Origin: Mobula hypostoma
Taxonomy: Eukaryota
DNA: 64,000 nt
Direction: 5' to 3'
Assembly: GCF_963921235.1 (NCBI RefSeq)
Contig: NC_086101.1
Span: forward strand, 31,496,001 to 31,560,000
Shown one piece after another: positions 6,065-60,744 of this stretch. The number at the start of each line of letters is the position of its first letter. Position 1 is the stretch's first letter. Under the pieces are notes generated by a model. The model saw only the letters and a list, made by a program, of their open reading frames with translations. It did not search any database and was not told the DNA's origin. The position numbers were made by a program, and so were the translations under genes.

Positions 6065-6129
6065 CCAATCAGACGCCGAGATTCTCACTCGTCATCTGTT
6101 TCCAGGTGGAATACATACCAATTTGCTCC
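6065..6129 (-). promoter_or_regulatory. MHC class II-type S-X1-X2-Y promoter module (module 1, proximal)
   Basis: X = CCTGGAAACAGATG (6106-6093; HLA-DRA recalled as CCTAGCAACAGATG). X2 = TGACGAG. Exact 20-bp spacer. Y = CTGATTGG (6072-6065). Weak S-position GGAGCAA 16 bp upstream of X. Confidence 0.85.
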
Positions 6130-6401
6130 GAATTACACCAAACTGGATTTGCTTTCGTTGAGGAAGAGATGCTCCTAGAAGGGGAGCATTCTTCAGAAGA
6201 AACATTTACAAGAGACTTTTGACCTGCGTTGAACTGAACAGTCTACGCAGATAATTTTACTTCACCCTGTCACTGCGGAGTTGAAGGAGAGGACGGATCC
6301 ACTCTGTTCAGTGGGTCGGACAGCACCAATAAGTGAGAAACTGGGTTAATTTCGCAAACAGGAGGAAATCTGCAAATTCTGGAATTTCAAGCAACATGCA
6401 T

Positions 6402-6537
6402 AAAAGTTGCTGGTGAACGCAGCAGGCCAGGCAGCATCTCTAGGAAGAGGTACAGTCGACGTCTCGAGTCCCGAAAAGTCGACCGTACCTCTTCCCAGAG
6501 ATGCAGCCTGGCCTGCTGCATTCACCAGTAACTTTTA
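6402..6537. repeat. ~60-bp-arm inverted repeat made of Penelope-associated terminal sequence
   Basis: Arms 6402-6460 and 6478-6537 are near reverse complements with a 17-nt loop. The same sequence family flanks Penelope fragments elsewhere in the window. Confidence 0.85.
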
Positions 6538-6849
6538 CGTGTTAACTGGGTTAATTTATCAGGTTTGAGGCTTTTCGTCAAGTCTGGTAAACCTTTATCC
6601 TTCCCTCTGCTGTACCTGACCCTCCCCTATCTTTGCTATTGAAAACTTTGACTATTGGTTTTGGACTCTCTATCTCTCCACTGAGAACCAGAACAGCACA
6701 GCACAAGAAAAGGCCTTTCAGCCTTCCATGTCTGTACTGACCATGATGTCAATTTAAACTGAACCCATCTGCCCACACATGGTCTGTATCCCTCCATTCG
6801 CTGACTAAATCCCTCTTAAATATTGCTACAATTCACTCTGGGAAAAACT

Positions 6850-7990
6850 CTCTATCTACCCTGTTCCCAACCTATCTCTGTAAAACTGCTCTTCCTTTTC
6901 CTCATTTCCTTCACCTCCACTGCATCTGTTCTCAGAATGTGGCTTTCCTTTCCAGGACATCTGAAATACCCTCCTTCTTAAAGAATGGGATTTCCATCTC
7001 TCCTCTATTGATACTGCGCTCACCTGTATCTCAGCATTTCCTGAAAATCTGCGCTCACCCCATCTTCCCACCACTTTAACAGTGATAGAGTTCGCCTTGT
7101 CCTTACCTAACATCCCATGAGCCACCACATCCAACATATCATTGTCCACAACCTCTGCCATTTCCAAAGGGATCCTATCACTGAACATATCTTTATCTCT
7201 CCACCCCCTTCCTGCATTGTGTTGGGATTGATCCCTATGCAATTCCCTTTTCCATTCATCCCTCCCTCCCGGCACTTATCCCTGCAAGCGGTCAAAGTGC
7301 TACACCTGCCCAATCACCTCCTACCTCACCTCCATTCAAAGCCCCGAACAGTCCTTCCAGGTGAGGCAACACTTCATTGCATCCATTGTGTCTGGTGCTC
7401 CCGATCTGGCCTCCTCTACATTGGTGAGGCATGTCATAAATTGGGGGGCTGCTTCGTCAAGTGGAATTTCCTGGTGGCCAAGCATTTTAATTCCAATTCT
7501 ATTTCCCGTTCCAACATGTCAGTCCATGGCCTCCTCCTTTGCCAAAATAAGGCCACCCTCAGGGTGGAGGAGCAACAACTTACATTTGTCTGGGTAGCCT
7601 CCAATCTGATGGCATGAACATCAATTTCTCCTTCTAGTAAAATATTCCCTCCACCTCTCCTCTTCCTCTATTCCCCACTCTGGCCTTTTACCTCTTCTCT
7701 CCTTCCTATCACTTCCCCCTGGGTCCCCTCCTCCTTCCCTTTCTCCTATGGTCCTCTCTCCTCTCCTATCAGAGTCCTTCTTCACCAGCCCTTCACCTTT
7801 TCCACCCACCTGGCTTCACCTATCACCTTCCAGCTAGCCTCCTCCCCTTCCTCTCACCTTTTTATTCTGACATCTTCCACCTTCCTTCTCAGTCCTAAAG
7901 AAAGGTCTCGGCCTGAAATGTCAACTGACTATCATTTCCATAGATGCTACCTGACCTGCTGAATTCCCCCAGCATTTTGTGTGTGTGTTA
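6850..7990 (+). mobile_element. Penelope-like element 3' fragment with GIY-YIG endonuclease relic
   Basis: Decayed HIQHII..L.HFQRDP.T.HIF, CKR.KCYTCP and CVWCSRSGLLYIGE motifs, a CT-rich 3' UTR and the terminal repeat. Confidence 0.8.
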
Positions 7991-9799: not shown

Positions 9800-12700
9800 C
9801 CCTCCACCTTTGTTCAGGACAGGAAAAACGGTAATCCCGGTAACTATAGGCACTGAGCCTCATGTCAGAAGTTGAGGCCACTGTTGTTTGTGGAATATAT
9901 CAATGATTTGGATGAAAGTGTTCAGTAGACAGGTGGATAACACCAAGATAAGTGGAGTTGTGGACAATGTAAAGCACATCAAAGAATACTGTGGGATTCA
10001 GACCATTTACAGATATGGTCAGAGAAGTGGCAGAAGGAGATCATTCCAGGCAAGTGTGAGATGTTACACATTGGGAAGTCAAATCAAAGGAGATAGTATA
10101 CAGTTAATTGGAGACCTCTTAGTAGTATCAGAATATAGAGGGATCTTGGGGATCCAGCCACAATTCACTGAAGTGGCTACATAAGTGGATAAGTGGTAAA
10201 GAAGGTGTACAGAATGTTTTCCTTCATTGGTAGGGTGTCCAGTTTAACAGTAAGAAAGTCATAATACAGCTATGTACATAATACATAACACAGCATAATA
10301 CACTTTTTTCTGGGGCAGTCGCGGCAGCGATGAGCGTCGTGATGCTGGAGTTGGATTCGCCGTCTGGAGTCACCTTGTTCAGAAACTTGCCAGCCTCCCC
10401 AGGGTGTGAACGACCGGCTCATGACACTACAGCTTCCACTACAGAACAGAAGTCAAGCCGCCCTGATCAGCGCCTATGCCCCCACAATGACCAACCCGGA
10501 TGAGACAAGACAAGTTCTATGAAGAACTAGACGCCCTACTATCAGCAGTGAGCAGCACCGACAAGCTGATCTTGCTCGGCAACTTCAGTGCGAGAGTAGG
10601 GCACGACTCTGCAGCCTGGCAGGGAGTTGTTGGGAGACATGGGATGGGCAAATGTAACAGTAACGGCCTACTCTTACTGAAGAACTGTACAGCATACGAC
10701 CTGCTCATCACCAACACAACTTTCCGCCTGCCTACCCATCACAAGACCTCGTGGATGCACCCCCTTTCTAAGCATTGGCATCTTATCGACTATGTCATTG
10801 TCAGGAGAAAAGACAGGCAGGATGTCAGAGTGACCAAGGCCATGTGTGGCACTGACTGCTGGACAGATCACAGGCTCATTGTCTCCAAAATGAAGCTCCG
10901 TTTCAGACCCAAGAGGCGACCACAAGGAAGCAAGGCTATGAAAAGAATCAATGTGACCAGGCTGAAGAACCCCAGCATAGCTTCAGCACTGGTTGAAGAT
11001 TTAGAAACCAAGCTTGCTGACCTACACCTTGCAGGCAGCACTGTGGATGACTGGGATCGCTTCAGGGATGCTGTCCATTCATCTGCACTGAAGATGCTAG
11101 GGCTTTCTACCTGCAAGCAGAATGACTGGTTCGATGAGAATGATGAGGAGATACAGGCTCTACTTGTTGAAAAGCAATGCCTTCATCATGCCCATCAGAA
11201 CAACCCATCATCAGCTGCCAAGAAAAACGCCTTTATCAGTGCTTGCAGGACAGTCCAGAATAAACTGCGTAAAATGCAAGATGCCTGGCTGAGTATCAAG
11301 GCAGATGAAATACAGGGATACACTGACAGAAACGACTTGAAACGATTCTATGAAGCCCTCAACACTCTCTACAGACCTCAGTCTCTTGGGAGTTTCCCCT
11401 TCCTGAGTATAGATGGTACAACTCTCATTACAGATCCTGCAGGCTCAGATCCTGCAGAGATGGGCTGAACACTTTGAAGCCGTCCTCAACTGACCATCAT
11501 CTATTAACGATGAGGTGATAGACAGGATTCCCCAGGTCGACATCAACAGTGCCGTGAATGACCCACTAGTAGTGGCCGAAGTCACGAAACTGTCAGCCAG
11601 CTATCCAGTGGCGAAGCCCCGGGGCAGATGCCATACCTGCAGAGATCTACAAAGCCGGTGGTCCTGTACTTATAGAGAAGCTCACCGAGTTCTTCCAGTC
11701 TTTTTGGAAGCAAGGATCCATTCCTCAGGAACTTAAAGATACATCCATCATACACCTCTACAAGAGGAAGGGCAATCGACCAGTATACGACAACCACCGA
11801 GGAATCTCGCTGCTCTCCATCACAGGAAAAACCCTTGCAAGAGTCCCGCTAAATGGTCTGGTCACTCATCTGGAGCTGGGCCTGCTGCCAGAGTCACAGT
11901 GTGGCTTTCGCAAAGGTCGTGGGACTATTGACATGATTTTTGCCAGGCTCCAACTTCAGGAGAAGTGTCAGGAGCAGAATTGCGAACTCTGCACAACTTT
12001 TGTTGACCTCACAAAAGCCTTCGACACTGTCTGCCGACAAGGCCTGTGGGGGAACATATCAAAGTTCGGCTGCCCCGCCAAATTCATTCAAATGGTTTGC
12101 CAGTTCCATGATGGCATGATGGCCAGAGCGCTGGACGGGGGAGAATCCTCTGAGGTGTTCCTGATCACCAATGGCATCAAACAGGGCTGTGTGCTCACAC
12201 CCACACTGTTCAGCATGATGTTTACTGCCATGCTGAATGATGCCTTCCAGGACAGAGATGCTGGAATCAGCCTCAGGTACAGAGTGGATGGGAAGCTCTT
12301 CAACCTGAGGAGACTTCAAGCAATTACCAAAGTGAAGGAGACTGTTCTGAGAGACTTCCTCTTTGCCAATGACTGCGCCCTGTATGCTGGCCTGGAGACA
12401 GAAATGCAAGTCAATATGGACAAATTCTCCATAGCTTGTGACAACTTTGGACTCACCATCAACATCAAAAAGACCGAAGTCATGCACCAGCCTGCCCCTA
12501 GTGCACCGTACACAGAACCGAAAATAACAATCAAAGGACGGAAACTACAGGCAGTGGACCAGTTTACTTACCTCGGCAGCACCCTCTCCCGAGCAGTGAC
12601 TATTGATACAGAAGTTAACTGCAGAATAACGAAGGAAAGTTCTGCTTTCGGTAGACTGTGCTCCACTGCATGGGAACGTCGAGGAATCAGTCCAGCAACA

Positions 12701-13940
12701 AAACTGAAGGTCTACAGAACCGTGGTAATCACTGCCCTCCTGTATGCCTGTGAAACGTGGACTGTGTATTGAAGGCATGCAGGACAGCTCAACCATTTCC
12801 ACATGACTTGTCTTCGCAGAATATTAGACATCAGGTGGCAAGACAAAGTACCAGACACTGAAATTCTCTCTAGGGCAAGTCTACCATCAGTCCACACACT
12901 GCTGATGAGAGCACAGACCCGGTGGGCAGGTCATGTCATCCGCATGCCGGACGAGCGCATACCCAAGCAGCTCCTTTTTGGGGAACTCTCTGCTGGAAGA
13001 CACTCGCAAGGAGGGCAAAAGAAACATTACAATGACACACTAAAGGCCTCCCTGAAGTAATTTGACATAGACACGGCCTCCTGGCACAAAACTGCCTTGC
13101 TTGGCGCGGCCTCATCCACAAGGGCTGTCAAGTTTACGAGGCAAGGCACATTGCTGAAGCACAACATAAGCGCGAGCTGCGCAAGTCCAGACCCACCAGC
13201 GCAACAACTGCAGTGCCTACACACGTCTGCCCAACATGTGCCAGGACATCCCGTGCCAGAATTGGCCTGACTAGTCATCTTTGGACACACCACATCCAGT
13301 CTCAAAGTGACTAATGATGTCGAGGTCTTCATCGATGACGATGGACGAACCATACAAGAAAGTAATAATACAGCTATATAAATCTTCAGACAAACTGCAC
13401 TTGGAGTATTGCGTGTGGTTCTGGTCATCCCCTGAAAGGAAGGATGTGGAAACTGTGGAGAGGGTACAGATGAGGTTTACCAGGATGCTGCTTGAATTAG
13501 AGGTATGAGCTATAAGGAAAGGTTAGACGACTTGAGCTGTCCTTCCTGGAATGTTGGATGCTTAAGGGAGACTTGATAGAGGATTTTAAAATTATGAGGG
13601 TCATAGATAGGGTGGATATTCTGAACCTTTTCCCCAGGGTAGAAATATAAATGCCAAAGGACATGCTTTTAAGGTTTTAGGGTTGAAGATTAGATGTGAT
13701 ATGAGGGACTAGTCTTTTACACAGAGGTAGGTACTTGGAATAGGTTACCAGGAATAGTGGTGGAAGCAGGCAGTTTGATGAAGTTTAAGAAGTTTTTGGA
13801 CAGACACATGAATATGAAGGGAATGGAGGAATATGGATGATACATAGGAAGAGGACATTGAACATCATTTGTTATCAAGACCATTGTGGGCCAAAGGGCC
13901 TGTCCAGTGCTGTACCTATTTTCTAAGTCTTATATTCTAT
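9800..13940 (+). mobile_element. CR1 fragment split by the RTE insertion (pieces ~9800-10273 and ~13356-13940)
   Basis: CR1 ORF2 motifs continue across the insertion (CEMLHIG before; HLEYCVWFWS and ERVQMRFTRML after). Confidence 0.8.
10298..13355 (+). mobile_element. 5'-truncated RTE-clade LINE (endonuclease + RT), inactivated by a few stops and frameshifts
   Basis: YTFFW, GVGFA, SAYAPT, DKFYEEL, GDFNARVG-like, WTDHRL, FVDLTKAFDTV, NGIKQGCVL and LFANDCAL motifs. A 22-bp target-site duplication (aagaaagt(c/a)ataatacagctat) lies at 10252-10273 and 13356-13377. Confidence 0.93.
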
Positions 13941-17171: not shown

Positions 17172-17359
17172 TTAAATAGTCCAATGAGATGTAAACTGGA
17201 AAGCCCCTAGATCATGTTCAGGCATGTTGAAACTGGTTGATTAAAATTATCTGTTGATTTGCTCAACAGTAACTCCACCTCAGTTGCCACCATCACCTAA
17301 TGAGAGGGATGATCTCGCAGGCGTCACAGCTGCTGGCTAAAATGGATCAGTGAGAGTCT
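17172..17359 (-). promoter_or_regulatory. S-X-Y module 2 with downstream NF-kB site, second CCAAT and TATA-like box
   Basis: S-like AGACTCT (17359-17353), 15-bp spacer, X GCCAGCAGCTGTG with X2 TGACGCC, 20 bp, then mutated Y CTCATTAG (17304-17297). GGGGCTTTCC at 17207-17198, ATTGG at 17185-17181, TATTTAA at 17178-17172. Confidence 0.65.
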
Positions 17360-27334: not shown

Positions 27335-27453
27335 TGGAAAGTCTCCGCTCCAGCCTCAACAGTAACTTCACACCCTGATCCACCATCAGCCAATGAGAGG
27401 ACAGAGCACCGAGCCATCACCAGTTGCTGGTTGAAATGGATCACTGTGGGTCA
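27335..27453 (-). promoter_or_regulatory. S-X-Y module 3 with NF-kB-like site
   Basis: S-like TGACCCA (27453-27447), 15-bp spacer, X ACCAGCAACTGGTG (27431-27418), 20 bp, Y CTCATTGG (27397-27390), and GAGACTTTCC (27344-27335). Confidence 0.75.
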
Positions 27454-30400
27454 GAAATGGTTGGAGGTGAAATGGATCACTGTGGGACAGAGATGGTTGG
27501 AGGTGAAATGGATCACTGTGGGACAGAGATGGTTGGAGGTGAAATGGATCACTGTGGGTAGAGATGGTTGGAGGTGAAATGGATCACTGTGGGTCAGAGA
27601 CGGTTGGAGGTGAAATGGATCACTGTGGGACAGAGATGGTTGGAGGTGAAATGGATCACTGTGGGTAGAGATGGTTGGAGGTGAAATGGATCACTGTGGG
27701 TCAGAGACGGTTGGAGCTGAAATGGATCACTGTGGGTCAGCAATGGTTGGAGGTGAAATGGATCACTGTGGGACAGAGACGGTTGGAGGTGAAATGGATC
27801 ACTGTGGGTCAGAGACGGTTGGAGGTGAAATGGATCACTGTGGGTCAGAGACGGTTGGAGGTGAAATGGATCACTGTGGGTCAGAGACGGTTGGAGGTGA
27901 AATGGATCACTGTGGGTCAGAGACGGTTGGAGGTGAAATGGATCACTGTGGGTAGAGACGGTTGGAGGTGAAATGGATCACTGTGGGTCAGAGACGGTTG
28001 GAGGTGAAATGGATCACTGTGGGTCAGAGATGGTTGGAGGTGAAATGGATCACTGTTGGTAGAGATGGTTGGAGGTGAAATGGATCACTGTTGGTAGAGA
28101 TGGTTGGAGGTGAAATGGATCACTGTGGGTCAGAGATGGTTGGAGGTGAAATGGATCACTGTTGGTAGAGATGGTTGGAGGTGAAATGGATCACTGTGGG
28201 TAGAGATGGTTGGAGGTGAAATGGATCACTGTGGGTCAGAGACGGTTGGAGGTGAAATGGATCACTGTGGGACAGAGATGGTTGGAGCTGAAATGGATCA
28301 CTGTGGGTCAGAGACGGTTGGAGGTGAAATGGATCACTGTGGGTCAGAGACGGTTGGAGGTGAAATGGATCACTGTGGGTCAGAGACGGTTGGAGGTGAA
28401 ATGGATCACTGTGGGTCAGAGACGGTTGGAGGTGAAATGGATCACTGTTGGTAGAGATGGTTGGAGGTGAAATGGATCACTGTTGGTAGAGATGATTGAA
28501 GGTGAAATGGATCACTGTGGGTCAGAGACGGTTGCAGGTGAAATGGATCACTGTGGGACAGAGATGGTTGGAGGTGAAATGGATCACTGTGGGACAGAGA
28601 CGGTTGGAGGTGAAATGGATCACTGTGGGTAGAGATGGTTGAAGGTGAAATGGATCACTGTGGGTCAGAGACGGTTGGAGGTGAAATGGATCACTGTGGG
28701 ACAGAGACGGTTGGAGGTGAAATGGATCACTGTGGGACAGAGATGGTTGGAGGTGAAATGGATCACTGTGGGTCAGAGACGGTTGGAGGTGAAATGGATC
28801 ACTGTGGGACAGAGATGGTTGGAGATGAAATGGATCACTGTGGGTCAGAGACGGTTGGAGGTGAAATGGATCACTGTGGGTCAGAGACGGTTGGAGGTGA
28901 AATGGATCACTGTGGGACAGAGATGGTTGGAGATGAAATGGATCACTGTGGGTCAGAGACGGTTGGAGGTGAAATGGATCACTGTGGGTCAGAGACGGTT
29001 GGAGGTGAAATGGATCACTGTGGGTAGAGATGGTTGGAGGTGAAATGGATCACTGTGGGTCAGAGACGGTTGGAGATGAAATGGATCACTGTGGGTAGAG
29101 ATGGTTGGAGGTGAAATGGATCACTGTGGGTCAGAGACGGTTGGAGGTGAAATGGATCACTGTGGGTCAGAGATGGTTGGAGGTGAAATGGATCACTGTG
29201 GGTCAGAGACGGTTGGAGGTGAAATGGATCAATGTGGGACAGAAATGGTTGGAGGTGAAATGGATCACTGTGGGACAGAGATGGTTGGAGCTGAAATGGA
29301 TCACTGTGGGTCAGAGACGGTTGGAGATGAAATGGATCACTGTGGGTCAGAGACGGTTGGAGGTGAAATGGATCACTGTGGGTCAGAGACGGTTGGAGAT
29401 GAAATGGATCACTGTGGGTAGAGATGGTTGGAGGTGAAATGGATCACTGTGGGACAGAGATGGTTGGAGATGAAATGGATCACTGTGGGTCAGAGACGGT
29501 TGGAGATGAAATGGATCACTGTGGGTCAGAGACGGTTGGAGGTGAAATGGATCACTGTGGGTCAGAGACGGTTGGAGGTGAAATGGATCACTGTGGGTCA
29601 GAGACGGTTGGAGGTGAAATGGATCACTGTGGGTCAGAGACGGTTGGAGGTGAAATGGATCACTGTGGGTCAGAGACGGTTGGAGGTGAAATGGATCACT
29701 GTGGGACAGAGATGGTTGGAGCTGAAATGGATCACTGTGGGTCAGAGACGGTTGGAGGTGAAATGGATCACTGTGGGTCAGAGACGTTGGAGGTGAAATG
29801 GATCACTGTGGGTCAGAGATGGTTGGAGGTGAAATGGATCACTGTGGGTCAGAGACGGTTGGAGGTGAAATGGATCACTGTGGGTCAGAGACGGTTGGAG
29901 GTGAAATGGATCACTGTGGGTAGAGATGGTTGGAGGTGAAATGGATCACTGTGGGTCAGAGACGGTTGGAGGTGAAATGGATCACTGTGGGTCAGAGATG
30001 GTTGGAGGTGAAATGGATCACTGTGGGTAGAGATGGTTGGAGGTGAAATGGATCACTGTGGGTCAGAGACGGTTGGAGGTGAAATGGATCACTGTGGGTC
30101 AGAGACGGTTGGAGGTGAAATGGATCACTGTGGGTCAGAGACGGTTGGAGGTGAAATGGATCACTGTGGGACAGAGATGGTTGGAGCTGAAATGGATCAC
30201 TGTGGGTCAGAGACGGTTGGAGGTGAAATGGATCACTGTGGGTAGAGACGGTTGGAGGTGGAATGGATCACTGTGGGTCAGAGACGGTTGGAGGTGAAAT
30301 GGATCACTGTGGGTCAGAGATGGTTGGAGGTGAAATGGATCACTGTTGGTAGAGATGGTTGGAGGTGAAATGGATCACTGTTGGTAGAGATGGTTGGAGG

Positions 30401-33400
30401 TGAAATGGATCACTGTGGGTCAGAGACGGTTGGAGGTGAAATGGATCACTGTGGGTCAGAGATGGTTGGAGGTGAAATGGATCACTGTGGGTAGAGATGG
30501 TTGGAGGTGAAATGGATCACTGTGGGTCAGAGACGGTTGGAGGTGAAATGGATCACTGTGGGACAGAGATGGTTGGAGGTGAAATGGATCACTGTGGGTA
30601 GAGATGGTTGGAGGTGAAATGGATCACTGTGGGTCAGAGACGGTTGGAGGTGAAATGGATCACTGTGGGTCAGAGACGGTTGGAGGTGAAATGGATCACT
30701 GTGGGTCAGAGACGGTTGGAGGTGAAATGGATCACTGTTGGTAGAGATGGTTGGAGGTGAAATGGATCACTGTTGGTAGAGATGGTTGAAGGTGAAATGG
30801 ATCACTGTGGGTCAGAGACGGTTGGAGGTGAAAATGGATCACTGTGGGTAGAGAGATGGTTGGAGATGAAATGGATCACTGTGGGTCAGAGACGGTGAGG
30901 TGAAATGGATCACTGTGGGTCAGAGACGGTGAAATGGATCACTGTGGGTCAGAGAGGTTGGAGATGAAATGGATCACTGTGGGTCAGAGACGGTTGGAGG
31001 TGAAATGGATCACTGTGGGTCAGAGACGGTTGGAGGTGAAATGGATCACTGTGGGTCAGAGATGGTTGGAGGTGAAATGAAATGGATCACTGTGGGTCAG
31101 AGACGGTTGGAGGTGAAATGGATCACTGTGGGTCAGAGACGGTTGGAGGTGAAATGGATCACTGTGGGTCAGAGACGGTTGGAGATGAAATGGATCACTG
31201 TGGGTCAGAGACGGTTGGAGGTGAAATGGATCACTGTGGGTCAGAGACGGTTGGAGTGAAATGGATCACTGTGGGTCAGAGACGGTTGGAGGTGAAATGG
31301 ATCACTGTGGGACAGAGATGGTTGGAGTGAAATGGATCACTGTGGGTAGAGACGGTTGGAGGTGAAATGGATCACTGTGGGTCAGAGACGGTTGGAGGTG
31401 AAATGGATCACTGTGGGTCAGAGACGGTTGGAGAGAAATGGATCACTGTGGGTCAGAGACGGTTGGAGGTGAAATGGATCACTGTGGGTCAGAGACGGTT
31501 GGAGGTGAAATGGATCACTGTGGGTCAGAGATGGTTGGAGGTGAAATGGATCACTGTGGGTAGAGATGGTTGGAGGTGAAATGGATCACTGTGGGTCAGA
31601 GACGGTTGGAGGTGAAATGGATCACTGTGGGTCAGAGACGGTTGGAGGTGAAATGGATCACTGTGGGTCAGAGACGGTTGGAGGTGAAATGGATCACTGT
31701 GGGACAGAGATGGTTGGAGGTGAAATGGATCACTGTGGGTCAGAGACGGTTGGAGGTGAAATGGATCACTGTGGGTCAGAGACGGTTGGAGGTGAAATGG
31801 ATCACTGTGGGTCAGAGACGGTTGGAGGTGAAATGGATCACTGTGGGTCAGAGACGGTTGGAGGTGAAATGGATCACTGTGGGTCAGAGACGGTTGGAGG
31901 TGAAATGGATCACTGTGGGTCAGAGAGGTTGGAGGTGAAATGGATCACTGTGGGTCAGAGACGGTTGGAGGTGAAATGGATCACTGTGGGTCAGAGACGG
32001 TTGGAGGTGAAACGGATCACTGTGGGTCAGAGACGGTTGGAGGTGAAATGGATCACTGTGGGTCAGAGACGGTTGGAGGTGAAATGGATCACTGTGGGTA
32101 GAGATGGTTGGAGGTGAAATGGATCACTGTGGGTCAGAGACGGTTGGAGGTGAAATGGATCACTGTGGGTCAGAGACGGTTGGAGGTGAAATGGATCACT
32201 GTGGGTAGAGACGGTTGGAGATGAAATGGATCACTGTGGGTCAGAGACGGTTGGAGGTGAAATGGATCACTGTGGGTCAGAGACGGTTGGAGGTGAAATG
32301 GATCACTGTGGGTCAGAGACGGTTGGAGGTGAAATGGATCACTGTGGGACAGAGACGGTTGGAGCTGAAATGGATCACTGTGGGTCAGAGACGGTTGGAG
32401 GTGAAATGGATCACTGTGGGTCAGAGACGGTTGGAGGTGAAATGGATCACTGTGGGTCAGAGACGGTTGGAGGTGAAATGGATCACTGTGGGTCAGAGAC
32501 GGTTGGAGGTGAAATGGATCACTGTGGGACAGAGACGGTTGGAGGTGAAATGGATCACTGTGGGTCAGAGACGGTTGGAGGTGAAATGGATCACTGTGGG
32601 TCAGAGACGGTTGGAGGTGAAATGGATCACTGTGGGACAGAGATGGTTGGAGGTGAAATGGATCACTGTGGGTCAGAGACGGTTGGAGGTGAAATGGATC
32701 ACTGTGGGTCAGAGACGGTTGGAGGTGAAATGGATCACTGTGGGACAGAGACGGTTGGAGGTGAAATGGATCACTGTGGGACAGAGATGGTTGGAGCTGA
32801 AATGGATCACTGTGGGTCAGAGACGGTTGGAGGTGAAATGGATCACTGTGGGACAGAGATGGTTGGAGGTGAAATGGATCACTGTGGGTAGAGATGGTTG
32901 GAGGTGAAATGGATCACTGTGGGTCAGAGACGGTTGGAGGTGAAATGGATCACTGTGGGTCAGAGACGGTTGGAGGTGAAATGGATCACTGTGGGTCAGA
33001 GACGGTTGGAGGTGAAATGGATCACTGTGGGTCAGAGATGGTTGGAGGTGAAATGGATCACTGTGGGTAGAGATGGTTGGAGGTGAAATGGATCACTGTG
33101 GGTCAGAGACGGTTGGAGGTGAAATGGATCACTGTGGGTCAGAGATGGTTGGAGGTGAAATGGATCACTGTGGGACAGAGATGGTTGGAGGTGAAATGGA
33201 TCACTGTGGGTCAGAGACGGTTGGAGGTGAAATGGATCACTGTGGGTAGAGATGGTTGGAGGTGAAATGGATCACTGTGGGTCAGAGACGGTTGGAGGTG
33301 AAATGGATCACTGTGGGTCAGAGACGGTTGGAGGTGAAATGGATCACTGTGGGTCAGAGACGGTTGGAGGTGAAATGGATCACTGTGGGACAGAGATGGT

Positions 33401-34384
33401 TGGAGGTGAAATGGATCACTGTGGGTCAGAGACGGTTGGAGGTGAAATGGATCACTGTGGGTCAGAGACGGTTGGAGGTGAAATGGATCACTGTGGGTCA
33501 GAGACGGTTGGAGGTGAAATGGATCACTGTGGGTCAGAGACGGTTGGAGGTGAAATGGATCACTGTGGGTAGAGATGGTTGGAGGTGAAATGGATCACTG
33601 TGGGTCAGAGACGGTTGGAGGTGAAATGGATCACTGTGGGTAGAGATGGTTGGAGGTGAAATGGATCACTGTGGGTCAGAGACGGTTGGAGGTGAAATGG
33701 ATCACTGTGGGTAGAGATGGTTGGAGGTGAAATGGATCACTGTGGGTAGAGATGGTTGGAGGTGAAATGGATCACTGTGGGTCAGAGACGGTTGGAGGTG
33801 AAATGGATCACTGTGGGTCAGAGACGGTTGGAGGTGAAATGGATCACTGTGGGTCAGAGACGGTTGGAGGTGAAATGGATCACTGTGGGTAGAGATGGTT
33901 GGAGGTGAAATGGATCACTGTGGGTCAGAGACGGTTGGAGGTGAAATGGATCACTGTGGGTCAGAGACGGTTGGAGGTGAAATGGATCACTGTGGGTCAG
34001 AGACGGTTGGAGGTGAAATGGATCACTGTGGGTCAGAGACGGTTGGAGGTGAAATGGATCACTGTGGGACAGAGATGGTTGGAGCTGAAATGGATCACTG
34101 TGGGTCAGAGACGGTTGGAGGTGAAATGGATCACTGTGGGTCAGAGACGGTTGGAGGTGAAATGGATCACTGTGGGTCAGAGACGGTTGGAGATGTAATG
34201 GATCACTGTGGGTAGAGATGGTTGGAGATGAAATGGATCACTGTGGGACAGAGATATGGTTGGAGATGAAATGGATCACTGTGGGTCAGAGACGGTTGGA
34301 GATTAAATGGATCACTGTGGGTAGAGATGGTTGAAGGTGAAATGGATCACTGTGGGACAGAGATGGTTGGAGATGAAATGGATC
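27432..34384. repeat. 36-bp minisatellite, ~190 copies (consensus ggttggaggtgaaatggatcactgtgggtcagagac; 35-bp ...gggtagagat variants)
   Basis: Directly visible. About 6.95 kb / 36 bp. One further unit lies at ~35087-35127 beyond the L1 insertion. Confidence 0.98.
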
Positions 34385-47700: not shown

Positions 47701-48182
47701 CTCACCGTTACCATCAGATAAAAGGTACAGAAACCTGAAGGCACACACTCAGTGATTCAGGAACAGCTTCTTCCCCTCTGCCATCCGATTCCTAAATGGT
47801 CATTCAACCCATGAACACTACCTGACTTTTTAAAATATATATTATTTCTGTTTTGCACGATCTTTTAATCTATTCAATATACACTCTAATTAATTTATTT
47901 ATTTATTTATTTTTACTTTTTTTCTTCTATATTATGTATTGCATTGAACTGCTGCTACTAAATTATCTAATTTCACGACACATGCCGATAATAGACTTGA
48001 CTCTGACTCTGATTCCTCCACTTTCTTATTCTTGCTTCTTACCCCTACCTTTTCCAGTCTTGATGAAGGGTCTCAGCCCTTCCATAGATTCTACTTGATT
48101 TACTGAGATAATTCAACTTTTTGTGTGTTCCAGGAAGGAAATTTTGGGGCCAGTTTCGATCTCTATGGTACCAAGGTTCCAG

Positions 48183-48298
48183 GCGCCCTCTAGAGGAGAC
48201 AGGGCCAGCTGCACGTTAACACGTCACCAGTGAGTGGTGCACACAACGCAGCTCTGTCCAATGGTAAAATGAATCTGTGCTCGTCATTGGTTGCCATG
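48183..48298 (-). promoter_or_regulatory. X-Y module 4 with adjacent CRE half-site and CTCF motif
   Basis: X CATGGCAACCAATG (48298-48285; contains the RFX half-site GTTGCCATG), X2 TGACGAG, 19 bp, ACCATTGG (48265-48258), GGTGACGT (48228-48221), and CCTCTAGAGGGCGC (48196-48183). Confidence 0.7.
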
Positions 48299-49329
48299 CA
48301 GAAACAGCAGAGAAACAATCGGCGGTGGGTTGCGGGTGCAACAAAAGAATATGAAACACACTGGAATTGAAATTCATTTATTGTTACGGAAGAAGTTTTT
48401 ATTTATTGTGTGCAGAGAGAAATTTAAAAGAGACTTGAGAGGCAACCTCATCTCACAGAGGAAAATACAAACATGGAATGAGCTACCAGAGGAAGTGTTG
48501 TGGCACTTCCAATGGGTCAACAGGTTGAGAAGGATATGGGCCAAACGTGGGGAAATGGCGGTGGTTTAGATGGGCATGTTGGATGGAATAGGCCAAATGG
48601 GCCGAAGAGCCTGTCTCTGTGCTGTACAAATATATGAATATATGATTCAGAAAGGGAAAGGGGCGGCTGGAAAATCTCAACTACAATCAGAAAAACTGCA
48701 ACCTCTCAAACCGCAGTCATTAACGTGAGGAGAGAAGCCAATGAAACAGCACGGCTTCAGTTTGTCACCTGTTGCTGGGTAGATTTGTTTTTGAATTTGT
48801 GGGCTGGCGGAGGCACCCCTGGGTGATTGGACTTGGCTAAATGGAGGAGATGAAGGAGGGCAGAGGAGAGGGATAAATTACCATGTTGGAACTGTGATAA
48901 CAGACCAGATGCTGGAAATATCCAGCTCAGGCAGTGGCAGTGGGGAGATTCGGGAACAGTTATAACACCTCGACCATCAGGCCTTTGAACCAGAGGAGAC
49001 AGCTTCACTCCCGCCATCACTGAATTGTTCTCACAACTTATGGTCTCACTTTCAAGGACTTCATCTTGATATTTATGAATATTTATTAATTTATTATTAT
49101 TTCCTTTATTTCTTTTTGTATTTACAGTTTGTTGTCTTCAGCACATCAGTTGTTTCTCCGTCCTGTTGGATGCAGCCTTTCATTGATTCCATTGTTTCTT
49201 GTATTACTGAGAATGCCAGCAAGAAGATGAATCTCAGAGTTGCATTTGATGATATTGTTTCTTGTATTTTAAGAATGACAGCAGAATCAACAGAGCAGGA
49301 AGCTCAAGAAGGGATTGTACAGTATGGAC

Positions 49330-52270
49330 AAGTTAAATAGGAATTGATATGGGAGGTGAGGGGAGTAATGAATTAAAAGTATTGTATATGAATGCACGGA
49401 GTATAAGAAATAAAGTGGATGGGCTTGAGGCTCAGTTGGAAATTGGTAAGTATGACGTTGTGGGAATAACAGAGACATGGCTTCAAGTGGACAGGGCCTG
49501 GGAAATGATTATTCAAAGGTATACGTCCTATCGAAAGGACAGACTGATGGGCACAGGGGGTGGGGTGGCTCTGTCAGTGAGGAATGATATTCAGTCCCTT
49601 GCGAGGGGGGACATAGAATCAGGAGACGTTGAGTCAGTATGGATAGAACTGAGAAATTCTAAGGATAGAAAGACCCTAATGGGAGTTATCTACGGCCCCC
49701 GAAACAGTAGTCTGGATGTAGGGTGTAAATTGAATCAAGAGTTAAAATTGGCATGTCGCAAAGGTAATGCTACAGTTGTTACGGGGGACTTCAGCATGCA
49801 GGTAGACTGGAGGAATTAGGTTGGTACTGGATCCCAAGAAAGGGAGTTTGTGGAGTCCCTCCGAGATGGATTCTTAGAACAGCTTGTACTGGAGCCTACC
49901 AGACAGAACGCAATTCTAGATTTAGTGTTGTGCAATGGACTGGATTTGATCAGGGACCTTGAGGTAAAGGAGTCATTAGGAGGTAGTGACCATAATATGA
50001 TAAGTTTTAATCTACAATTTGAGAGGGAGAAGGGAAACTCGGAAGTGTCAGTATTACAGTTGAACAAAGGGAACTATGGTGCTGTGAGGGAGGAGCTGGC
50101 CAAAGTTCAATGGAACAATACCCTAGCAGGGATGACAGTGGAACAACAATAGCAGGTATTCCTGGGAATAATGCAGAAGGTGCAGGATCAGTTCATTCCA
50201 AAGAGGAAGAAAGATCCTAAGGGGAGTAAGGGGAGGCCGTGGCTGACAAGGGAAGTAATGGACAGTATAAAAATAAAAGAGAAGTATAACATAGCAAAGA
50301 CGAGTGGGAAGCCGGAGGATTGGGAAACTTTTAAAAAGCAACAGAAGGTAACTAAAAAGGCAATACATGGAGAAAAAATGAGGTACGAAGGTAAACCAGC
50401 CAAGAATATAAAGGAGGATAGTAAAAGCTTCTTTAGGTATGTGAAAAGGAAAAAAATAGTTAAGACCAAAATTGGGCCCTTGAAGACAGAAGTGGGTGAA
50501 TTTATTCTGGGGAACAAGGAAATGGCAGATGAGTTGAACAGGTACTTTGGATCTGTCTTCACTAGGGAAGACACAAACAATCTCCCAGATGTAATAGTGG
50601 CCAAAGGACTTAGGGTAATGGATGAATTGAAGGAAATTTATATTAGACAGGAAATGGTGTTGGATAGACTGTTGGGTCTTAAGGCTGATAAGTCCCCGGG
50701 ACCTGATGGTCTGCATCCCAGGGTATGTAAGGAGGTGGCTTTAGAAATCGTGGACGCATTGGTAATCATTTTCCAATGTTCTATAGATTCAGGGTCAGTT
50801 CCTGTGGATTGGAGGGTGGCTAATGTTGTCCCTCTCTTCAAGAAGGGAGGAAGAGAGAAAACAGGGAATTATAGACCGGTTAGCCTGATGTTGGTGGTGG
50901 GAAAGATGCTGGAGTCAATTATAAAAGATGAAATTACAACACATCTGGATAGCAGTAACAGGATTGGTCAGAGTCAGCATGGATTTACGAAGGGGAAATC
51001 GTGCTTGACAAATCTTCTGAAATTTTTTGAGGATGTAACTATGAAAATGGACAAGGGAGAGCCAGTGGATGTAGTGTACCTGGACTTTCAGAAAGCCTTT
51101 GATAAAGTCCCACATAGGAGATTAGTGGGCAAAATTAGGACACATGGAATTGGGGGCAGAGTACTGACATGGATTGAAAATTGGCTGGCTGACAGAAAAC
51201 AAAGAGTAGCGATTAACGGGTCCGTTTTGGAATGGCAGGCGGTGACCAGTGGGGTACCGCAGGGTTCAGTGCTGGGACCGCAGCTGTTTACAATATATAT
51301 TAATGATTTAGATGAGGGAATTAAAAGTAACATTAGCGAATTTGCCGATGACACAAAGCTGGGTGGCAGTGTGAAATGTGAGGAGGATGTTATGAGAATG
51401 CAGAGTGACTTGGACAGGCTGGGTGAGTGGGCAGATGCATGGCAGATGCAGTTTAATGTGGATAAATGTGAGGTTATCCACTTTGGTGGTAAGAACGGGA
51501 AGGCAGATTATTATCTAAATGGAGTCAAGTTAGGAAAAGGGGAAGCACAACGAGATCTAGGTGTTCTTGTACATCGGTCACTGAAAGCAAGCATGCAAGT
51601 ACAGCAGGCAGTGAAGAAAGCTAATGGCATGCTGGCCTTCATAACAAGGGGAATTGAGTATAAGAGCAAAGAGGTCCTTCTGCAGCTGTACAGGGCCCTG
51701 GTGAGACCACACCTGGAGTACTGTGTGCAGTTTTGGTCTCCAAATTTGAGGAAGGATATTCTTGCTATTGAGGGAGTGCAGCATAGGTTCACAAGGTTAA
51801 TTCCCGGGATGGTGGGACTGACATATGTCGAAAGATTGGAGCGACTGGGCTTGTATACTCTGGAATTTAGAAGGCTGAGAGGGGATCTTATTGAAACATA
51901 TAAGATTATTAAGGGATTGGACACGCTGTAGACAGGAAGCATGTTCCCGCTGATGGGTGAGTCCAGAACCAGGGGCCACAGTTTAAGAATAAGGGGTAGG
52001 CCATTTAGAACGGAGTTGAGGAAAAACTTTTTCACCCAGAGAGTGGTGGATATGTGGAATGCTCTGCCTCAGAAGACTGTGGAGGCCAAGTCTCTGGATA
52101 CTTTCAAAAAAGAGATGGATAGAGCTCTTAAAGATAGTGGAATGAAAGGTTATGGGGATAAGGCAGGAACTGGATATTGATAGTGGATGATCAGCCATGA
52201 TCACAGTGAATGGCGGTGCTGGCTTGAAGGGCTGAATGGCCTACTCCTGCACCTATTGTCTATTGTCTAT
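49330..52270 (+). mobile_element. Young CR1 with near-complete ORF2 (endonuclease + RT), a few stops
   Basis: LYMNARSIRNK...GITETWL endonuclease, the 586-aa RT ORF 50171-51931 (KFADD variant EFADD) and a (ctattgt)n tail. Confidence 0.95.
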
Positions 52271-57200: not shown

Positions 57201-58300
57201 ATGGGATCCAAGGAGATTTTGCTTTGTATCCAGAATTGGCTTGGCCACAGGAGGCAAAGGGTAGTTGTAGATGGTTTGTGTTCCGTATGGTGGTCAGTGA
57301 ACAGTGATGTTCCGCAGGGATCTGTTCTGGGATCTCTTTGTGATTTTTATCAATGACCTGCATGAAGATGTAAAAGGGTGAGCTTGTAAATTTGCTGATG
57401 ACACAAAAGTTGGGAGTGTTGTGGATTGTCTGGACGGTTGTCAGAAGTTACAGCGGGACATCGATAGGATGCAAAACTGGGCTGAGAAGTGGCAGATGGA
57501 CTTCAACCCAGATAAGTGTGAAATGGTTCATTTTGGTAGGTCCAATCTGAAGACAGAATATAATAATAATGGTAAGACTCTTGTCAGTGTGGGGGATCAG
57601 CGAGATCTTGGGATCCATGTCCATAGGACATTAAAAAACTGCTGCACAAGTTGACAGTGTTGTTAAGAAGGCGTATGGTGTGATGGCCTTCTTCAACCAT
57701 AGGATTGAGTTCAAGAGCCATGAGGTAATGTTAAAGCTATATAAGACCTTGGTTAGACCCCATTTGGAGTACTATGTTCAGTTCCAGTCACCTGACTACA
57801 GGAAGGATGTGGATACTATAGAGAGAGTGCAGAGGAGATTTACAAGGATGTAGCCTGGATTAGAGGGTGTGCCTTATGAGAATAGGTTGAGTGAACTTGG
57901 TCTTTTCTCCTTGGAGCAACAGAGGATGAGAGGTGACCTGATAGAGGTGTATAAGATGAATGAGAGGAATCGATCGTGTTGATAGCCAGAGGCTTTTTCC
58001 CAGGACTGAAATGGCAAACATGAATGGGCATAGTTTTAAGGTGCTTGGAAGTAGGAATGTCAGAGGTAAGATTTTCACACAGAGAGTGGTGGGTGTGTGG
58101 AATGCACTGCCAGTGACGGTGGTGGAGGCGGATACGATAGGGTCTTTTAAGAGCCTCTTAGGTAGGTAGATGGAGCTTATAAAAACAGAGGGCTATGCCG
58201 TAGGGATATTCTAGGCAGTTTCTAGAGTGTGTAACTTGGTCAGTACGACATTGTACACTGAAGGGCCTATAATATGCTGTAGATTTCTCTGTTCTGTGTT
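54240..58300 (+). mobile_element. Near full-length but decayed CR1 (5' UTR, ORF1, ORF2, tail)
   Basis: ORF1 MAMECSSCRMW...CGK zinc finger, coiled coil and GDS esterase motif; ORF2 YFNA.SI..K, ITETW, SPGPDG and KFADD; many stops and internal deletions. Confidence 0.88.
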
Positions 58301-60452
58301 TTGTGAATGCAGAGGAGATTTACAAGGAAGTTACCAAGACTCAAGAGACTGAGTACAGAGGTATAAATGAGGGGTGATCTTAGATCATCATTATGTGGTA
58401 TGTTGTATGACGTAGGTGATCATTGTTTGTGATCATGATTGTTCCTGGCAAATTTTTTATGGAAGTAGTTTTCCATTGTGGTCTTTACAAGATGGGTGAT
58501 CCCAGCCATTAACCATACTATTCAGAGATTGTCGGCCTGGCATCAGCGATCACATAACCAGGACTTGTGGTATGAACCAACTGCTCATATGACCATCCAC
58601 CAGCTGCTCTCATGGCTTCATGTGAGCCTGATTGTGGGGTGGGGGGGAGTGCGAAGCAGCTGCTACACCTTGCCCAAGAGTGACCTCAGGTGAGCAGAGA
58701 GAAGGAGCCCTAACCCCTCATCTGATAGGGACATATCTCCATCTTATAGAGATGTATAACATCAAGAGGGACATATATAGAGTGAATGTATAAAAGGGAG
58801 ACTTCTTTACACAAAGGATGGTACTGTTTGAACAATTTAGTTATTTGTTTATCTATTATTTATTTTTTTATTGTAACTTACAATAATTTTTGTGTCTTGC
58901 ACTGTAACTGCTGCCACAAAACAGGAAATTTCATGACATTTGTCACTGACAATAAACCTAATTCTGCTATATGTGGAATCAGTTGCCAGTGAAGTGGTTG
59001 AAGTACATGAACCACATTCACAAGGTGCTTGGACAGATACATGGACAGGAAAGGTTTAGAGGGACATGGGCCAACGCAGGCGAGTGGGAGTCGTTTGATG
59101 GGCATGAATAAGTTGGGACAAAGGGCATTTTTCTGTGCTGTCTAACCTATGCAAAAAAAAATCTGCAGGAGAAACACAGCAGGTTAAGCAGCATCCGTGG
59201 AGGGAAATGGACAGTCAATCTTTCGGGTCGAGACGCTTCATTGAGCCTCAAAATGTTGACTACTCATTTCCCTCCACAGTTGCTGCCTGACCTGCTGAGT
59301 TCCTCCAGCGTTTTGTATGTGTTGCTGTGGCTAAACTATATTCCCACGAGACACTGGGACAACATCAAGCTATTGGTAATTGGAAATAAATCATGTATAT
59401 TTAAAGTAAGGCAAAGAAGGACAAATGTGTTTAAAACACGGTTATCGGGACAAGAGCCCTTCCACGGCCAATACAATAGAGCAGTCACCATCGCTGGACA
59501 GACAGCGCTAGTGAAGGGTTAATCCTGAGTCTCTGCATGGGAGGGAGCAATGGGAGGGGCAGTTTGCAATCCCAGCTCTCACACATGGAATTCTCTGCCC
59601 CCAAGCGTGGAGAGGGCCAGATTGTCACATAGTGTATACAAAGTGAAGCTGGAGAAGTATTGGAGCAGCTGAATATCCCTCCCTGGCTCCTATTTTCTTG
59701 TCTTCTGACAGTGCAGAGCAAGGCCGACTGCCCTCCATCACCAGCGATCTCTCGGAGTAACTTACCCTCATCAGTGTCCTGTCTGCCCCCTCTAATCTCC
59801 GGTCAATGGTAAAACACATGGGTCTTCACACTGTAACTGGGACATAGAGTCATGGACCTAATGTGTGTAAATAAAGGTTCAATTGGCAGCATGGATTTAG
59901 CGGGCCGAATGGCCTGTTTCTGTGTTGTCCAACTCTATGAAAGAGAGGTCAGTAATCAGGACAGGAGAGCGGGTGGCTAATCACATATGACTGTGTGTGT
60001 CATATCTGATATGTGTGTGTTTGTGTGCATGTGTACACACAGGACATGAGAGGGAGATCAGTAGCCAGGTGTGTTTGTATACAGGACGGGGGGGGGGGGT
60101 CAGTAACCAGGTGCGTGTGTACACAGGCAGGAGAGAGAAGTCTGTAATTCAGGTGGTTACATGGGACAATGGGGTAATGGTGGTGGAGAATTGGTCAGTG
60201 TCCAGCTGGGAGATGGCGTGTCCCTCCTTGGCCAAATAGAGTGTGTTGTGCAGACTCTGGGTGCGGTACGCAGTATGGGGAGATGCTGAAATACTACACT
60301 TAGCTCTGTCCCAGGTAACCAGACCCGTCTCTCCCCCTTCCACCCGACCACAACTTAAAAATTTATTCTAACTTTCCTCTGTTCTGGTGTAAGCTCAACC
60401 ATGGACTCTGCGTCTCTCCACGGCTGCTGCCCGACAGCTGAGAGTTTCCTCC

Positions 60453-60744
60453 TTTCACTTCCTCTCGGTCTGTCTCAGTACACGGAGAGTGGGGGTTGGG
60501 GAGGAGAGGTTCAGTCATTGCAGCTCTGGGGTTGCTCACGGTATTGATAAGGTTAAAATTATTGTGTCCCTGTAATCTGTCAAAAGGGATGTGGGCTGTG
60601 AGCGTCCCAGGACTGAAACCAGAGCTGCGGCAATACAAACCCGGCCCAAACCAGTGATGTAAACATCGGCCAATCCCGCCCAATCACAGTGTAGCGGTGT
60701 GTGGCGTCACCAGTCTCCGGGTAAACCTGTCGGCCTCCTTGTCC
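60453..60744 (-). promoter_or_regulatory. X-Y module 5 (class I-like) with double CCAAT, GC box and a nearby Ets-IRF composite element
   Basis: S-position GGACAAG (60744-60738), 16 bp, X CCCGGAGACTGGTG (60721-60708), X2 TGACGCC, then ATTGG-GCGGG-ATTGG (60684-60670). GGAAGTGAAA at 60462-60453. A plus-strand donor CGG/GTGAGT lies at 60788. Confidence 0.7.

What the first reader, a model, noticed from the sequence alone, without database searches (positions are those of the whole stretch)
6065..60744. Five co-oriented MHC-type X-Y modules spread over 55 kb upstream of a class II alpha leader exon: a candidate cartilaginous-fish locus control region
Seen: X/X2/Y modules at 6065-6106, 17297-17337, 27390-27431, 48258-48298 and 60680-60721. 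All are on the minus strand. CCAAT-to-X distances are 28, 28, 28, 27 and 28 bp, and each sits in a rare non-TE island. Known: this helical-phase-constrained module binds RFX, CREB/ATF and NF-Y and recruits CIITA (class II) or NLRC5 (class I). Mammalian class II loci also use distal S-X-Y/XL enhancers. Inference: a multi-module long-range class II control region, or promoter relics of tandemly duplicated MHC genes, in an early-diverging jawed vertebrate. I know of no description of this, but I could not search.
Basis: partly seen in the sequence, partly recalled or inferred. Interest (0 to 1): 0.88.

Follow-up and report, generated by a model that had tools for sequence, protein, structure and literature searches.

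The report
Ray MHC promoter plus orphan copies
In a ray's immune-gene region, the compound DNA switch that turns on antigen-presenting genes in humans sits in front of one very active gene and recurs five more times upstream with no gene attached, which suggests that leftover or distal copies of this switch go back to early jawed vertebrates.

Summary
I scanned for the human-type core GCAAC-N2/3-TGACG-N19/20-ATTGG, allowing up to 2 mismatches in 15 positions. About 0.47 hits are expected by chance. Four hits have at most 1 mismatch, against about 0.02 expected.

Module 1 is a working promoter. RNA contigs cover a signal-peptide exon (ATG 5913, phase-1 donor after 5847) at depths in the thousands and splice to an exon outside the window. 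Modules 2 and 3 are paralogues in decay: one has lost its Y box, the other has a mutated X2, and both are CpG-depleted. Module 4 sits in a single-copy island that is silent in RNA. A related species shows no substitution across it. The window's only CTCF-consensus match lies 62 bp downstream of it. Module 5 is conserved and silent, but its X1 box is weak. I found no MHC exon downstream of modules 2-5.

Best reading: these are promoter-derived orphan X-Y modules like human XL sequences, and some are probably still regulatory. A locus control region is possible but unproven. Calling the gene "class II alpha" is plausible but unverified.

The parts
6065..6106 (-). Module 1, the proximal promoter module: X1 (CCTGGAAAC), X2 (TGACGAG), a 20-nt spacer and Y (CTGATTGGTT).
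   Evidence: Sequence. One mismatch to the 15-position core. Single copy in relatives. CpG o/e 0.80 against 0.30 for the window.
5847..6011 (-). Exon 1 of the expressed gene. The 5' end lies roughly at 5968-6011. The ATG is at 5913, followed by a 20-aa signal peptide (MGAEVYFFVLATALICGAQA) and TK. The GT donor follows 5847, in phase 1.
   Evidence: RNA run X5 has word depth of about 4000-7000 here, against about 8 in the intron. A loose end at 5847 continues into unlisted exon-2 letters that read Y-Q-H-E-Q-L-M. An adapter-tagged contig ends at 5968.
1..5846 (-). First intron (partial, more than 5.8 kb). It is full of repeats and holds a CpG-rich stretch at 3400-5450. Exon 2 is not in the window.
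   Evidence: The first 20 nt of exon 2 do not occur in the window. X5 contigs with zero mismatches cover 374-5704 at depth 7-12, while the module 4 island has depth 0 in the same run.
17297..17337 (-). Module 2, a decayed orphan module: X1 is AGCAGC, X2 is TGACGCC, and Y is mutated to CATTAGG.
   Evidence: 2 mismatches. Paralogous to module 3, 76% over 112 bp. CpG o/e 0.26. No leader exon and no Pfam hit downstream.
27390..27431 (-). Module 3, an orphan module: X1 is CCAGCAAC, X2 has decayed to TGATG (a CpG-to-TpG change relative to module 2), and Y is CTCATTGGCT.
   Evidence: 1 mismatch. The alignment with module 2 shows the X1 and Y blocks at 81-94% identity and the X2-Y spacer at about 40%. 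CpG o/e 0.11.
27470..34380 (.). A 36-bp minisatellite of about 190 copies, whose unit derives from the 5' flank of module 3.
   Evidence: 193 blastn hits of the module 3 flank fall in this range. The repeats are visible.
48258..48298 (-). Module 4, the best orphan module: X1 is CATGGCAAC, X2 is TGACGAG, the spacer is 19 nt and Y is CCATTGG. It lies in the single-copy island 48093-48416.
   Evidence: 0 mismatches. RNA depth 0 in X5. Organism B's main contig shows no listed substitution at 48227-48304, against about 7-11% in the adjacent 48090-48226. A 1-nt insertion after 48280 gives organism B the canonical 20-nt spacer. CpG o/e 0.67.
48182..48196 (-). CTCF-consensus site (CCTCTAGAGGGCGCC), 62 bp downstream of the Y box of module 4.
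   Evidence: It is the only match in the 64-kb window to CCASYAGRKGGCRSY with up to 1 mismatch. No difference is listed in organisms B or C across 48175-48204.
48738..48775 (-).
   Evidence: 1 mismatch. Sequence. The stretch 48650-49031 has no other copy in the window. Genome-wide copy number was not tested.
60680..60721 (-). Module 5: a weak X1 (CCCGGAGAC), X2 TGACGCC, a 20-nt spacer, then Y GTGATTGG followed by a GC box and a second inverted CCAAT.
   Evidence: 2 mismatches, the level at which 0.47 chance hits are expected. RNA runs X5, X6 and X36 hold 0.00 of its words, while relatives hold 0.10-0.36. CpG o/e 0.50. No leader exon or Pfam hit downstream.

Best explanation
The window holds the 5' end of a highly expressed MHC class II-type gene. 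Its promoter (module 1) is a human-style X1-X2-Y enhanceosome site.

Upstream, over about 55 kb of LINE-rich DNA, lie five more modules in the same orientation. I read them as descendants of duplicated MHC promoters that have lost their genes, like human XL sequences.

Selection has kept, or kept until recently, their RFX, CREB/ATF and NF-Y sites in the fixed spacing.
- Modules 4 and 4b, with the adjacent CTCF site, most likely still assemble the enhanceosome in CIITA-positive cells. They would then act as a non-transcribed distal enhancer or architectural element for the class II gene or genes.
- Modules 2 and 3 are decaying.
- The status of module 5 is uncertain.

Shown: motif enrichment, strand bias, promoter activity of module 1, silence and local conservation of module 4, and the module 2/3 paralogy. 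Inferred: factor binding, CIITA dependence, enhancer or looping function, and a duplication origin for modules other than 2 and 3.
For: - Six hits against 0.47 expected, and four with at most 1 mismatch against about 0.02 expected; all are on one strand.
- Module 1: RNA depth in the thousands, a confirmed splice donor and intron coverage.
- Apart from modules 2 and 3, no two modules share flank similarity, yet their cores match at 13-15 of 15 positions. Copies drifting neutrally for that long should have lost the core as well.
- Modules 2 and 3 conserve the X1 and Y blocks but not the spacer.
- Module 4: single copy, no listed substitution over 78 bp in organism B (P about 0.003 at the flank rate; about 0.045 for the 41-bp module alone).
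- The window's only CTCF-consensus match lies 62 bp from module 4 and shows no listed difference in two relatives.
- CpG is retained at modules 1, 4 and 5.
- Mammalian precedent: distal X-Y modules act as a locus control region, about 40 XL sequences exist, XL-7 and XL-8 are promoter remnants that still bind RFX and CIITA, and XL-9 binds CTCF (PMC2292219).
Against: - There are no chromatin or binding data.
- I found no RNA at modules 4 and 5, whereas the human DRA distal module gives low-level transcripts.
- The relatives I compared are only about 10% diverged, so the conservation test is weak, and the difference table was truncated.
- Uniform orientation is not needed for enhancers and points to origin, not function.
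- Modules 2 and 3 carry disabling changes and are CpG-depleted.
- No S/W box at a fixed distance could be found.
- The background was estimated from shuffles and the opposite strand of one window, not from the whole genome.
Confidence: 0.45

Rival explanations
1. Modules 2-5 are dead promoter relics. They are leftovers of tandemly duplicated class II or class I genes whose bodies were deleted or overwritten by transposons, and they have no present function.
For: - All modules are co-oriented.
- Modules 2 and 3 are paralogous, with a lost Y box or a mutated X2 and with CpG depletion.
- No RNA at modules 4 and 5.
- Class II copy number varies from 1 to 4 among elasmobranchs (PMC10751288).
- Human XL-7 and XL-8 are such remnants.
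Against: - No exon relic was found: no YxCxVxH in any frame, no Ig-like open reading frame, and no Pfam hit in 20 downstream ORFs.
- Modules 4, 4b and 1 keep 14-15 of 15 core positions although no flank similarity remains.
- Module 4 and its CTCF site are more conserved than their flank.
Confidence: 0.33
2. The orphan modules are working promoters of unrecognised transcripts. These could be alternative first exons of the module 1 gene, non-coding RNAs, or genes expressed only in other tissues or after interferon.
For: - Module 5 has a promoter-like GC box and a double CCAAT.
- CpG is retained at modules 4 and 5.
- Only a few RNA libraries were available.
Against: - X5, where the module 1 gene is very high, has depth 0 over the whole module 4 island.
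- Three RNA runs hold 0.00 of the module 5 words.
- No ATG with a signal peptide and a donor lies downstream of any orphan module.
Confidence: 0.12
3. The modules are chance motif matches, or motifs carried by a repeat family.
For: - At 2 mismatches, 0.47 hits per window are expected, so module 5 alone could be chance.
- Module 3 abuts a minisatellite and a transposon.
- Copy number was not tested for modules 2, 3 and 4b.
Against: - Four hits with at most 1 mismatch against about 0.02 expected.
- None on the plus strand or in the reversed sequence.
- Modules 1 and 4 are single copy in three related genomes.
- Only modules 2 and 3 resemble each other.
Confidence: 0.05

Closest known systems
Mammalian MHC class II W/S-X1-X2-Y (SXY) promoter module, for example HLA-DRA
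   Same: Same order and orientation of the RFX-type X1, the CRE-type X2 and the inverted CCAAT. The X2-to-Y register of 25 nt equals that of HLA-DRA as I recall it from memory. Module 1 lies about 55-100 bp upstream of a mapped transcript 5' end and fronts a phase-1 leader exon (module properties from PMC7866136).
   Different: No S/W box at a fixed distance was recognised. The species is a ray. Binding by RFX5-RFXAP-RFXANK, CREB, NF-Y and CIITA is untested.
Human X box-like (XL) sequences, including the promoter remnants XL-7 and XL-8 (Gomez et al. 2005, as summarised in PMC2292219)
   Same: These are non-promoter X or X-Y boxes scattered through the class II region. Some are remnants of pseudogene promoters that still bind RFX and CIITA. 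Here five orphan modules lie upstream of a class II-type gene.
   Different: No pseudogene exons are detectable here. All modules are co-oriented. Activity is unknown.
[quoted passage not shown]
   Same: An X-box-like element is paired with a CTCF site in intergenic class II DNA. Module 4 has the window's only CTCF-consensus match 62 bp away, with no listed difference in two relatives.
   Different: CTCF binding and looping are untested. Only one flanking gene is visible in the window.
Distal X-Y module and locus control region upstream of mouse E-alpha and human HLA-DRA (Masternak 2003 and Krawczyk 2004, cited in PMC2292219)
   Same: Distal copies of the promoter module lie upstream of a class II gene.
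   Different: The mammalian element lies a few kb upstream (2.3 kb and inverted for DRA, from my memory) and gives low-level transcripts. Here the modules lie 11-55 kb upstream, are all direct, and I found no RNA at the two tested.

Membership tests
MHC SXY enhanceosome module | X1 box (an RFX5-type half-site of the AGCAAC kind, preceded by CC) | tested here: met
   GCAAC is exact in modules 3, 4 and 4b. Modules 1 (GAAAC) and 2 (GCAGC) have one mismatch. Module 5 (GAGAC) has two.
MHC SXY enhanceosome module | X2 box (CRE half-site TGACG) 2-3 nt downstream of X1 | tested here: met
   TGACG in modules 1, 2, 4 and 5. TGATG in module 3 and TGACA in module 4b.
MHC SXY enhanceosome module | Y box (inverted CCAAT) at a fixed distance from X2 | tested here: met
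   ATTGG follows a 20-nt spacer in modules 1, 3, 4b and 5, and a 19-nt spacer in module 4 (20 nt in organism B). Module 2 fails, with ATTAG.
MHC SXY enhanceosome module | W/S box at a fixed distance upstream of X1 | tested here: inconclusive
   Stacking the six modules shows no shared motif at a common distance. Candidates exist in module 1 (GGAGCAAATTGG) and in modules 2 and 3 (GATCCATTT), but at different spacings.
MHC SXY enhanceosome module | Cooperative binding of RFX, CREB and NF-Y, and recruitment of CIITA or NLRC5 | not testable with these tools
   Needs ChIP or CUT&Tag, or reporter assays.
MHC SXY enhanceosome module | Location just upstream of the start of an antigen-presentation gene | tested here: met
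   Met for module 1 only. Not met for modules 4 and 5, which have no RNA and no exon. RNA was not tested for modules 2, 3 and 4b.
[quoted passage not shown] | A distal X-Y module that is occupied, acetylated and weakly transcribed in class II-positive cells and is needed for expression | not testable with these tools
   Only the sequence criterion is met. I saw no extragenic RNA at module 4 (X5 depth 0) or at module 5.
XL-9-type CTCF element | A CTCF site next to an X-box-like element between class II genes | tested here: inconclusive
   The motif is present and shows no listed difference in two relatives. Binding, and a second flanking class II gene, were not shown.
Pseudogene promoter relic | Remnants of the gene's exons downstream of the module | tested here: not met
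   No C1-set signature in any frame, no Ig-like ORF, and no Pfam hit in 20 downstream minus-strand ORFs. Sensitivity for badly decayed exons is limited.
MHC class II alpha gene (identity of the module 1 gene) | A leader exon with a signal peptide ending in phase 1, followed by alpha1 and alpha2 (C1-set) exons | tested here: inconclusive
   The leader exon and its phase are met. The first 7 residues of exon 2 give TKYQHEQLM, which resembles the K-x-x-H start of mammalian alpha chains, but only from my memory. The remaining exons lie outside the window.

The most novel reading that the evidence does not exclude
The ray class II region already has the mammalian regulatory architecture. On this reading, a promoter SXY module works together with several distal, CIITA-dependent X-Y enhancers, one of them paired with a CTCF anchor like XL-9. 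Long-range enhanceosome and CTCF control of class II genes would then date to the origin of jawed-vertebrate adaptive immunity rather than being a mammalian elaboration.
Probability: 0.25. Interest if true: 0.8.

Novelty: new member of a known kind. Interest (0 to 1): 0.6.

Why it matters
SXY control of MHC genes is a textbook case of a composite enhancer, but it has been worked out almost entirely in mammals. In the searched library, the two main papers on cartilaginous-fish MHC organisation and class II genes never use the word promoter, and the organisation paper never uses enhancer. No paper combined X box, Y box and shark.

This window gives an RNA-verified SXY-type promoter in a ray, with an X2-to-Y spacing that matches my recollection of HLA-DRA. 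It also gives a defined set of orphan modules, one of them next to a CTCF site. These are concrete targets for ATAC-seq, CUT&Tag and reporter assays. Such tests could show whether distal enhanceosome sites and CTCF anchoring are ancestral features of MHC regulation.

Tried and rejected
- Chance: rejected by shuffles, the opposite strand and the reversed sequence.
- A plus-strand hit at 61039 turned out to be a chance match inside a Tc1/mariner remnant.
- Four extra X1-X2-only hits at 49157, 44572, 24933 and 11219 are weak TGATG matches and were dismissed.
- Leader exons downstream of modules 2-5: none found.
- MHC or Ig exons in the window: none by the YxCxVxH scan, an Ig heuristic, or Pfam on 30 ORFs, which found only LINE reverse transcriptase.
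- Flank homology among modules: found only between modules 2 and 3.
- Exon 2 of the module 1 gene is not in the window. I could not identify the gene, because a 29-residue N-terminus is too short for the protein searches and the paper supplements did not contain it.
- I did not run a profile or tblastn search with known MHC proteins, because none was available from a tool and long sequences may not be typed in.
Full report
**What is there.** The five stated modules exist on the minus strand at the stated coordinates. Each has an RFX-type X1 half-site, a CRE-type X2 2-3 nt further on, and an inverted CCAAT. The distance from the start of TGAYG to the start of ATTGG is 25, 25, 25, 24 and 25 nt. 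From memory, this is also the register in HLA-DRA and HLA-A. Three details differ from the finding. Module 2 has ATTAG instead of a CCAAT box. Module 3 has TGATG instead of TGACG. Module 5 has a poor X1 (GAGAC).

**Is it more than chance?** I scanned both strands with a core taken from the mammalian consensus, not fitted to these sites: GCAAC-N2/3-TGACG-N19/20-ATTGG, 15 specified positions.
- With up to 2 mismatches there are six hits, all on the minus strand.
- The plus strand has no hit, and the reversed sequence has none.
- Sixty dinucleotide shuffles give a mean of 0.47 hits (maximum 2).
- With up to 1 mismatch there are four hits (modules 1, 3, 4 and 4b). The shuffles gave none, and the analytic expectation is about 0.02.
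- Looser regular expressions agree.
- The single plus-strand hit of the loosest pattern, at 61039, lies in a Tc1/mariner remnant and is what chance predicts.
- Module 5 sits at the mismatch level where a chance hit is plausible. Module 2 is vouched for by its paralogy to module 3.

**Module 1 is a working promoter.**
- Downstream of the Y box lie an ATG (5913), a 20-residue signal peptide and a GTGAGT donor after 5847 in phase 1.
- In RNA run X5 of the same species, word depth over this exon is about 4000-7000, against about 8 in the flanking intron.
- Two contigs leave the genome exactly at 5847 and continue with 20 letters that extend the reading frame as Y-Q-H-E-Q-L-M.
- An adapter-tagged contig end at 5968 and a joint at 6011 suggest that the transcript starts 55-100 bp downstream of the Y box.
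- Those 20 letters are not in the window, so intron 1 is longer than 5.8 kb.
- X5 contigs with zero mismatches cover 374-5704 at depth 7-12. The same run has depth 0 over the single-copy island of module 4. The intron coverage is therefore transcription, not contaminating DNA.

In elasmobranchs the class II region holds one to four alpha and beta genes next to the class Ia region (PMC10751288). The mature N-terminus TKYQH, with the splice in codon 3, resembles mammalian alpha chains. That comparison is from memory, so 'class II alpha' remains plausible but untested.

**The orphan modules.** Only module 1 has a leader exon. I found no trace of an MHC or Ig-domain exon:
- no YxCxVxH in any frame;
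- no Ig-like ORF;
- no Pfam hit in 20 minus-strand ORFs downstream of the modules.

The long ORFs are LINE reverse transcriptases.

**Modules 2 and 3.** They are paralogues, 76% identical over 112 bp. Their X1 and Y blocks and a block downstream of Y are 81-94% identical, while the X2-Y spacer is about 40% identical. So the motifs were once under constraint in both copies. Both are now CpG-depleted (o/e 0.26 and 0.11, against 0.30 for the window). Module 2 has lost its Y box. The X2 of module 3 shows a CpG-to-TpG change. A 36-bp minisatellite of about 190 units has grown out of the 5' flank of module 3.

**Modules 4 and 4b.**
- Module 4 matches the core perfectly.
- It lies in a 320-bp single-copy island between high-copy repeats and has no RNA in X5.
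- In organism B (about 7-11% diverged in the adjacent 137 bp) no substitution is listed across 48227-48304, which covers the whole module.
- Organism B has a 1-nt insertion in the spacer, which gives it the canonical 20 nt.
- The probability of no substitution is about 0.003 for the 78-bp block and about 0.045 for the 41-bp module alone. This is modest evidence, and the difference table was truncated.
- Sixty-two bp downstream of the Y box lies the window's only match to the CTCF consensus with at most 1 mismatch. No difference is listed there in organisms B or C.
- A second CRE at 48221-48226 is not conserved.
- Module 4b lies 480 bp upstream of module 4, beyond a repeat fragment.

**Module 5.** It has a GC box and a second CCAAT, and it retains CpG. 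Three RNA runs hold none of its words, while relatives hold 10-36% of them.

**Interpretation.** Apart from modules 2 and 3, the modules share no flank similarity. Yet they match a 15-position spaced core at 13-15 positions. Chance origin is excluded statistically. Neutral relics old enough to have lost all flank similarity should also have lost the core. Selection has therefore maintained these sites, at least until recently.

Uniform orientation has a probability of about 0.03-0.06 if orientation were free. It points to an origin by tandem duplication of promoter-bearing segments, because enhancers do not need a fixed orientation.

The mammalian class II region offers exact precedents (PMC2292219):
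- a distal X-Y module upstream of E-alpha and HLA-DRA that acts as a locus control region;
- about 40 X box-like sequences;
- XL-7 and XL-8, which are remnants of DRB pseudogene promoters and still bind RFX and CIITA;
- XL-9, which binds CTCF.

My best reading (0.45) is that the ray modules are promoter-derived orphan sites of this kind. Modules 4 and 4b with the CTCF site are probably still used as a silent distal platform, and modules 2 and 3 are decaying. Rivals:
- pure relics, 0.33;
- unrecognised promoters, 0.12;
- chance or repeat-borne motifs, 0.05.

**Novelty.** SXY modules, distal X-Y enhancers and XL relics are known kinds, so this is a new member of a known kind in an early-diverging lineage. 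In the searched library I found no description of X/Y-box promoters or distal modules in cartilaginous fish. W/S, X2 and Y motifs are reported in teleost class I promoters (PMC7573153). Other notes of this scan on this same window raise the same sub-features: the leader exon, the module 2/3 paralogy, the CTCF coupling and the minisatellite. I tested those here and they hold.

**Limits.**
- There are no chromatin or binding data.
- The background comes from one window.
- The relatives compared are close.
- RNA and copy number were not tested for modules 2, 3 and 4b.
- The identity of the module 1 gene was not established.

Noticed in passing
window 27470-34380: A 36-bp minisatellite of about 190 units. 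Its unit (CACAGTGATCCATTTCACCTCCAACCATCTCTGTCC-like) derives from the sequence just 5' of the X1 box of module 3. The paralogous module 2 has no such array.
   Followed up: partly
window 3400-5450: A CpG-rich, GC-rich stretch (o/e 0.63-0.90) inside the first intron of the expressed gene. It is covered by intron-level RNA and has no Pfam hit in its ORFs.
   Followed up: partly
window 42850-44300: A GC- and CpG-rich region with overlapping ORFs in several frames that repeat a proline/glycine/serine-rich unit (SPGPGGIQVPSQV-like). It is probably a tandem repeat. No Pfam family matched.
   Followed up: no
window 4678-5674: A contig of organism C joins 4677 directly to 5675. About 1 kb of intron 1 is therefore an insertion in this species or a deletion in the relative.
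   Followed up: no
window 48280/48281: Both contigs of organism B carry one extra base in the X2-Y spacer of module 4. The spacer is 20 nt there and 19 nt in this genome.
   Followed up: partly
window 61040-61525: A Tc1/mariner remnant with a transposase helix-turn-helix-like ORF on the minus strand. It lies just upstream of module 5 and holds the only plus-strand TGAYG-N20-ATTGG match, which I read as chance.
   Followed up: partly
window 50171-51931 and 10500-12772, 20699-21904, 25065-25916, 40661-41671: LINE reverse-transcriptase ORFs, including one uninterrupted ORF of 586 aa. The ORF at 21305-21901 also hits Pfam ALKBH8_N.
   Followed up: partly
window 17190-17200 and 27335-27345: A kappaB-like decamer lies downstream of the Y box in both paralogues (GGGGCTTTCC in module 2, GGAGACTTTCC in module 3), followed by a shared CAGTTT and a shared TTCTTCCCAGTA block.
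   Followed up: no
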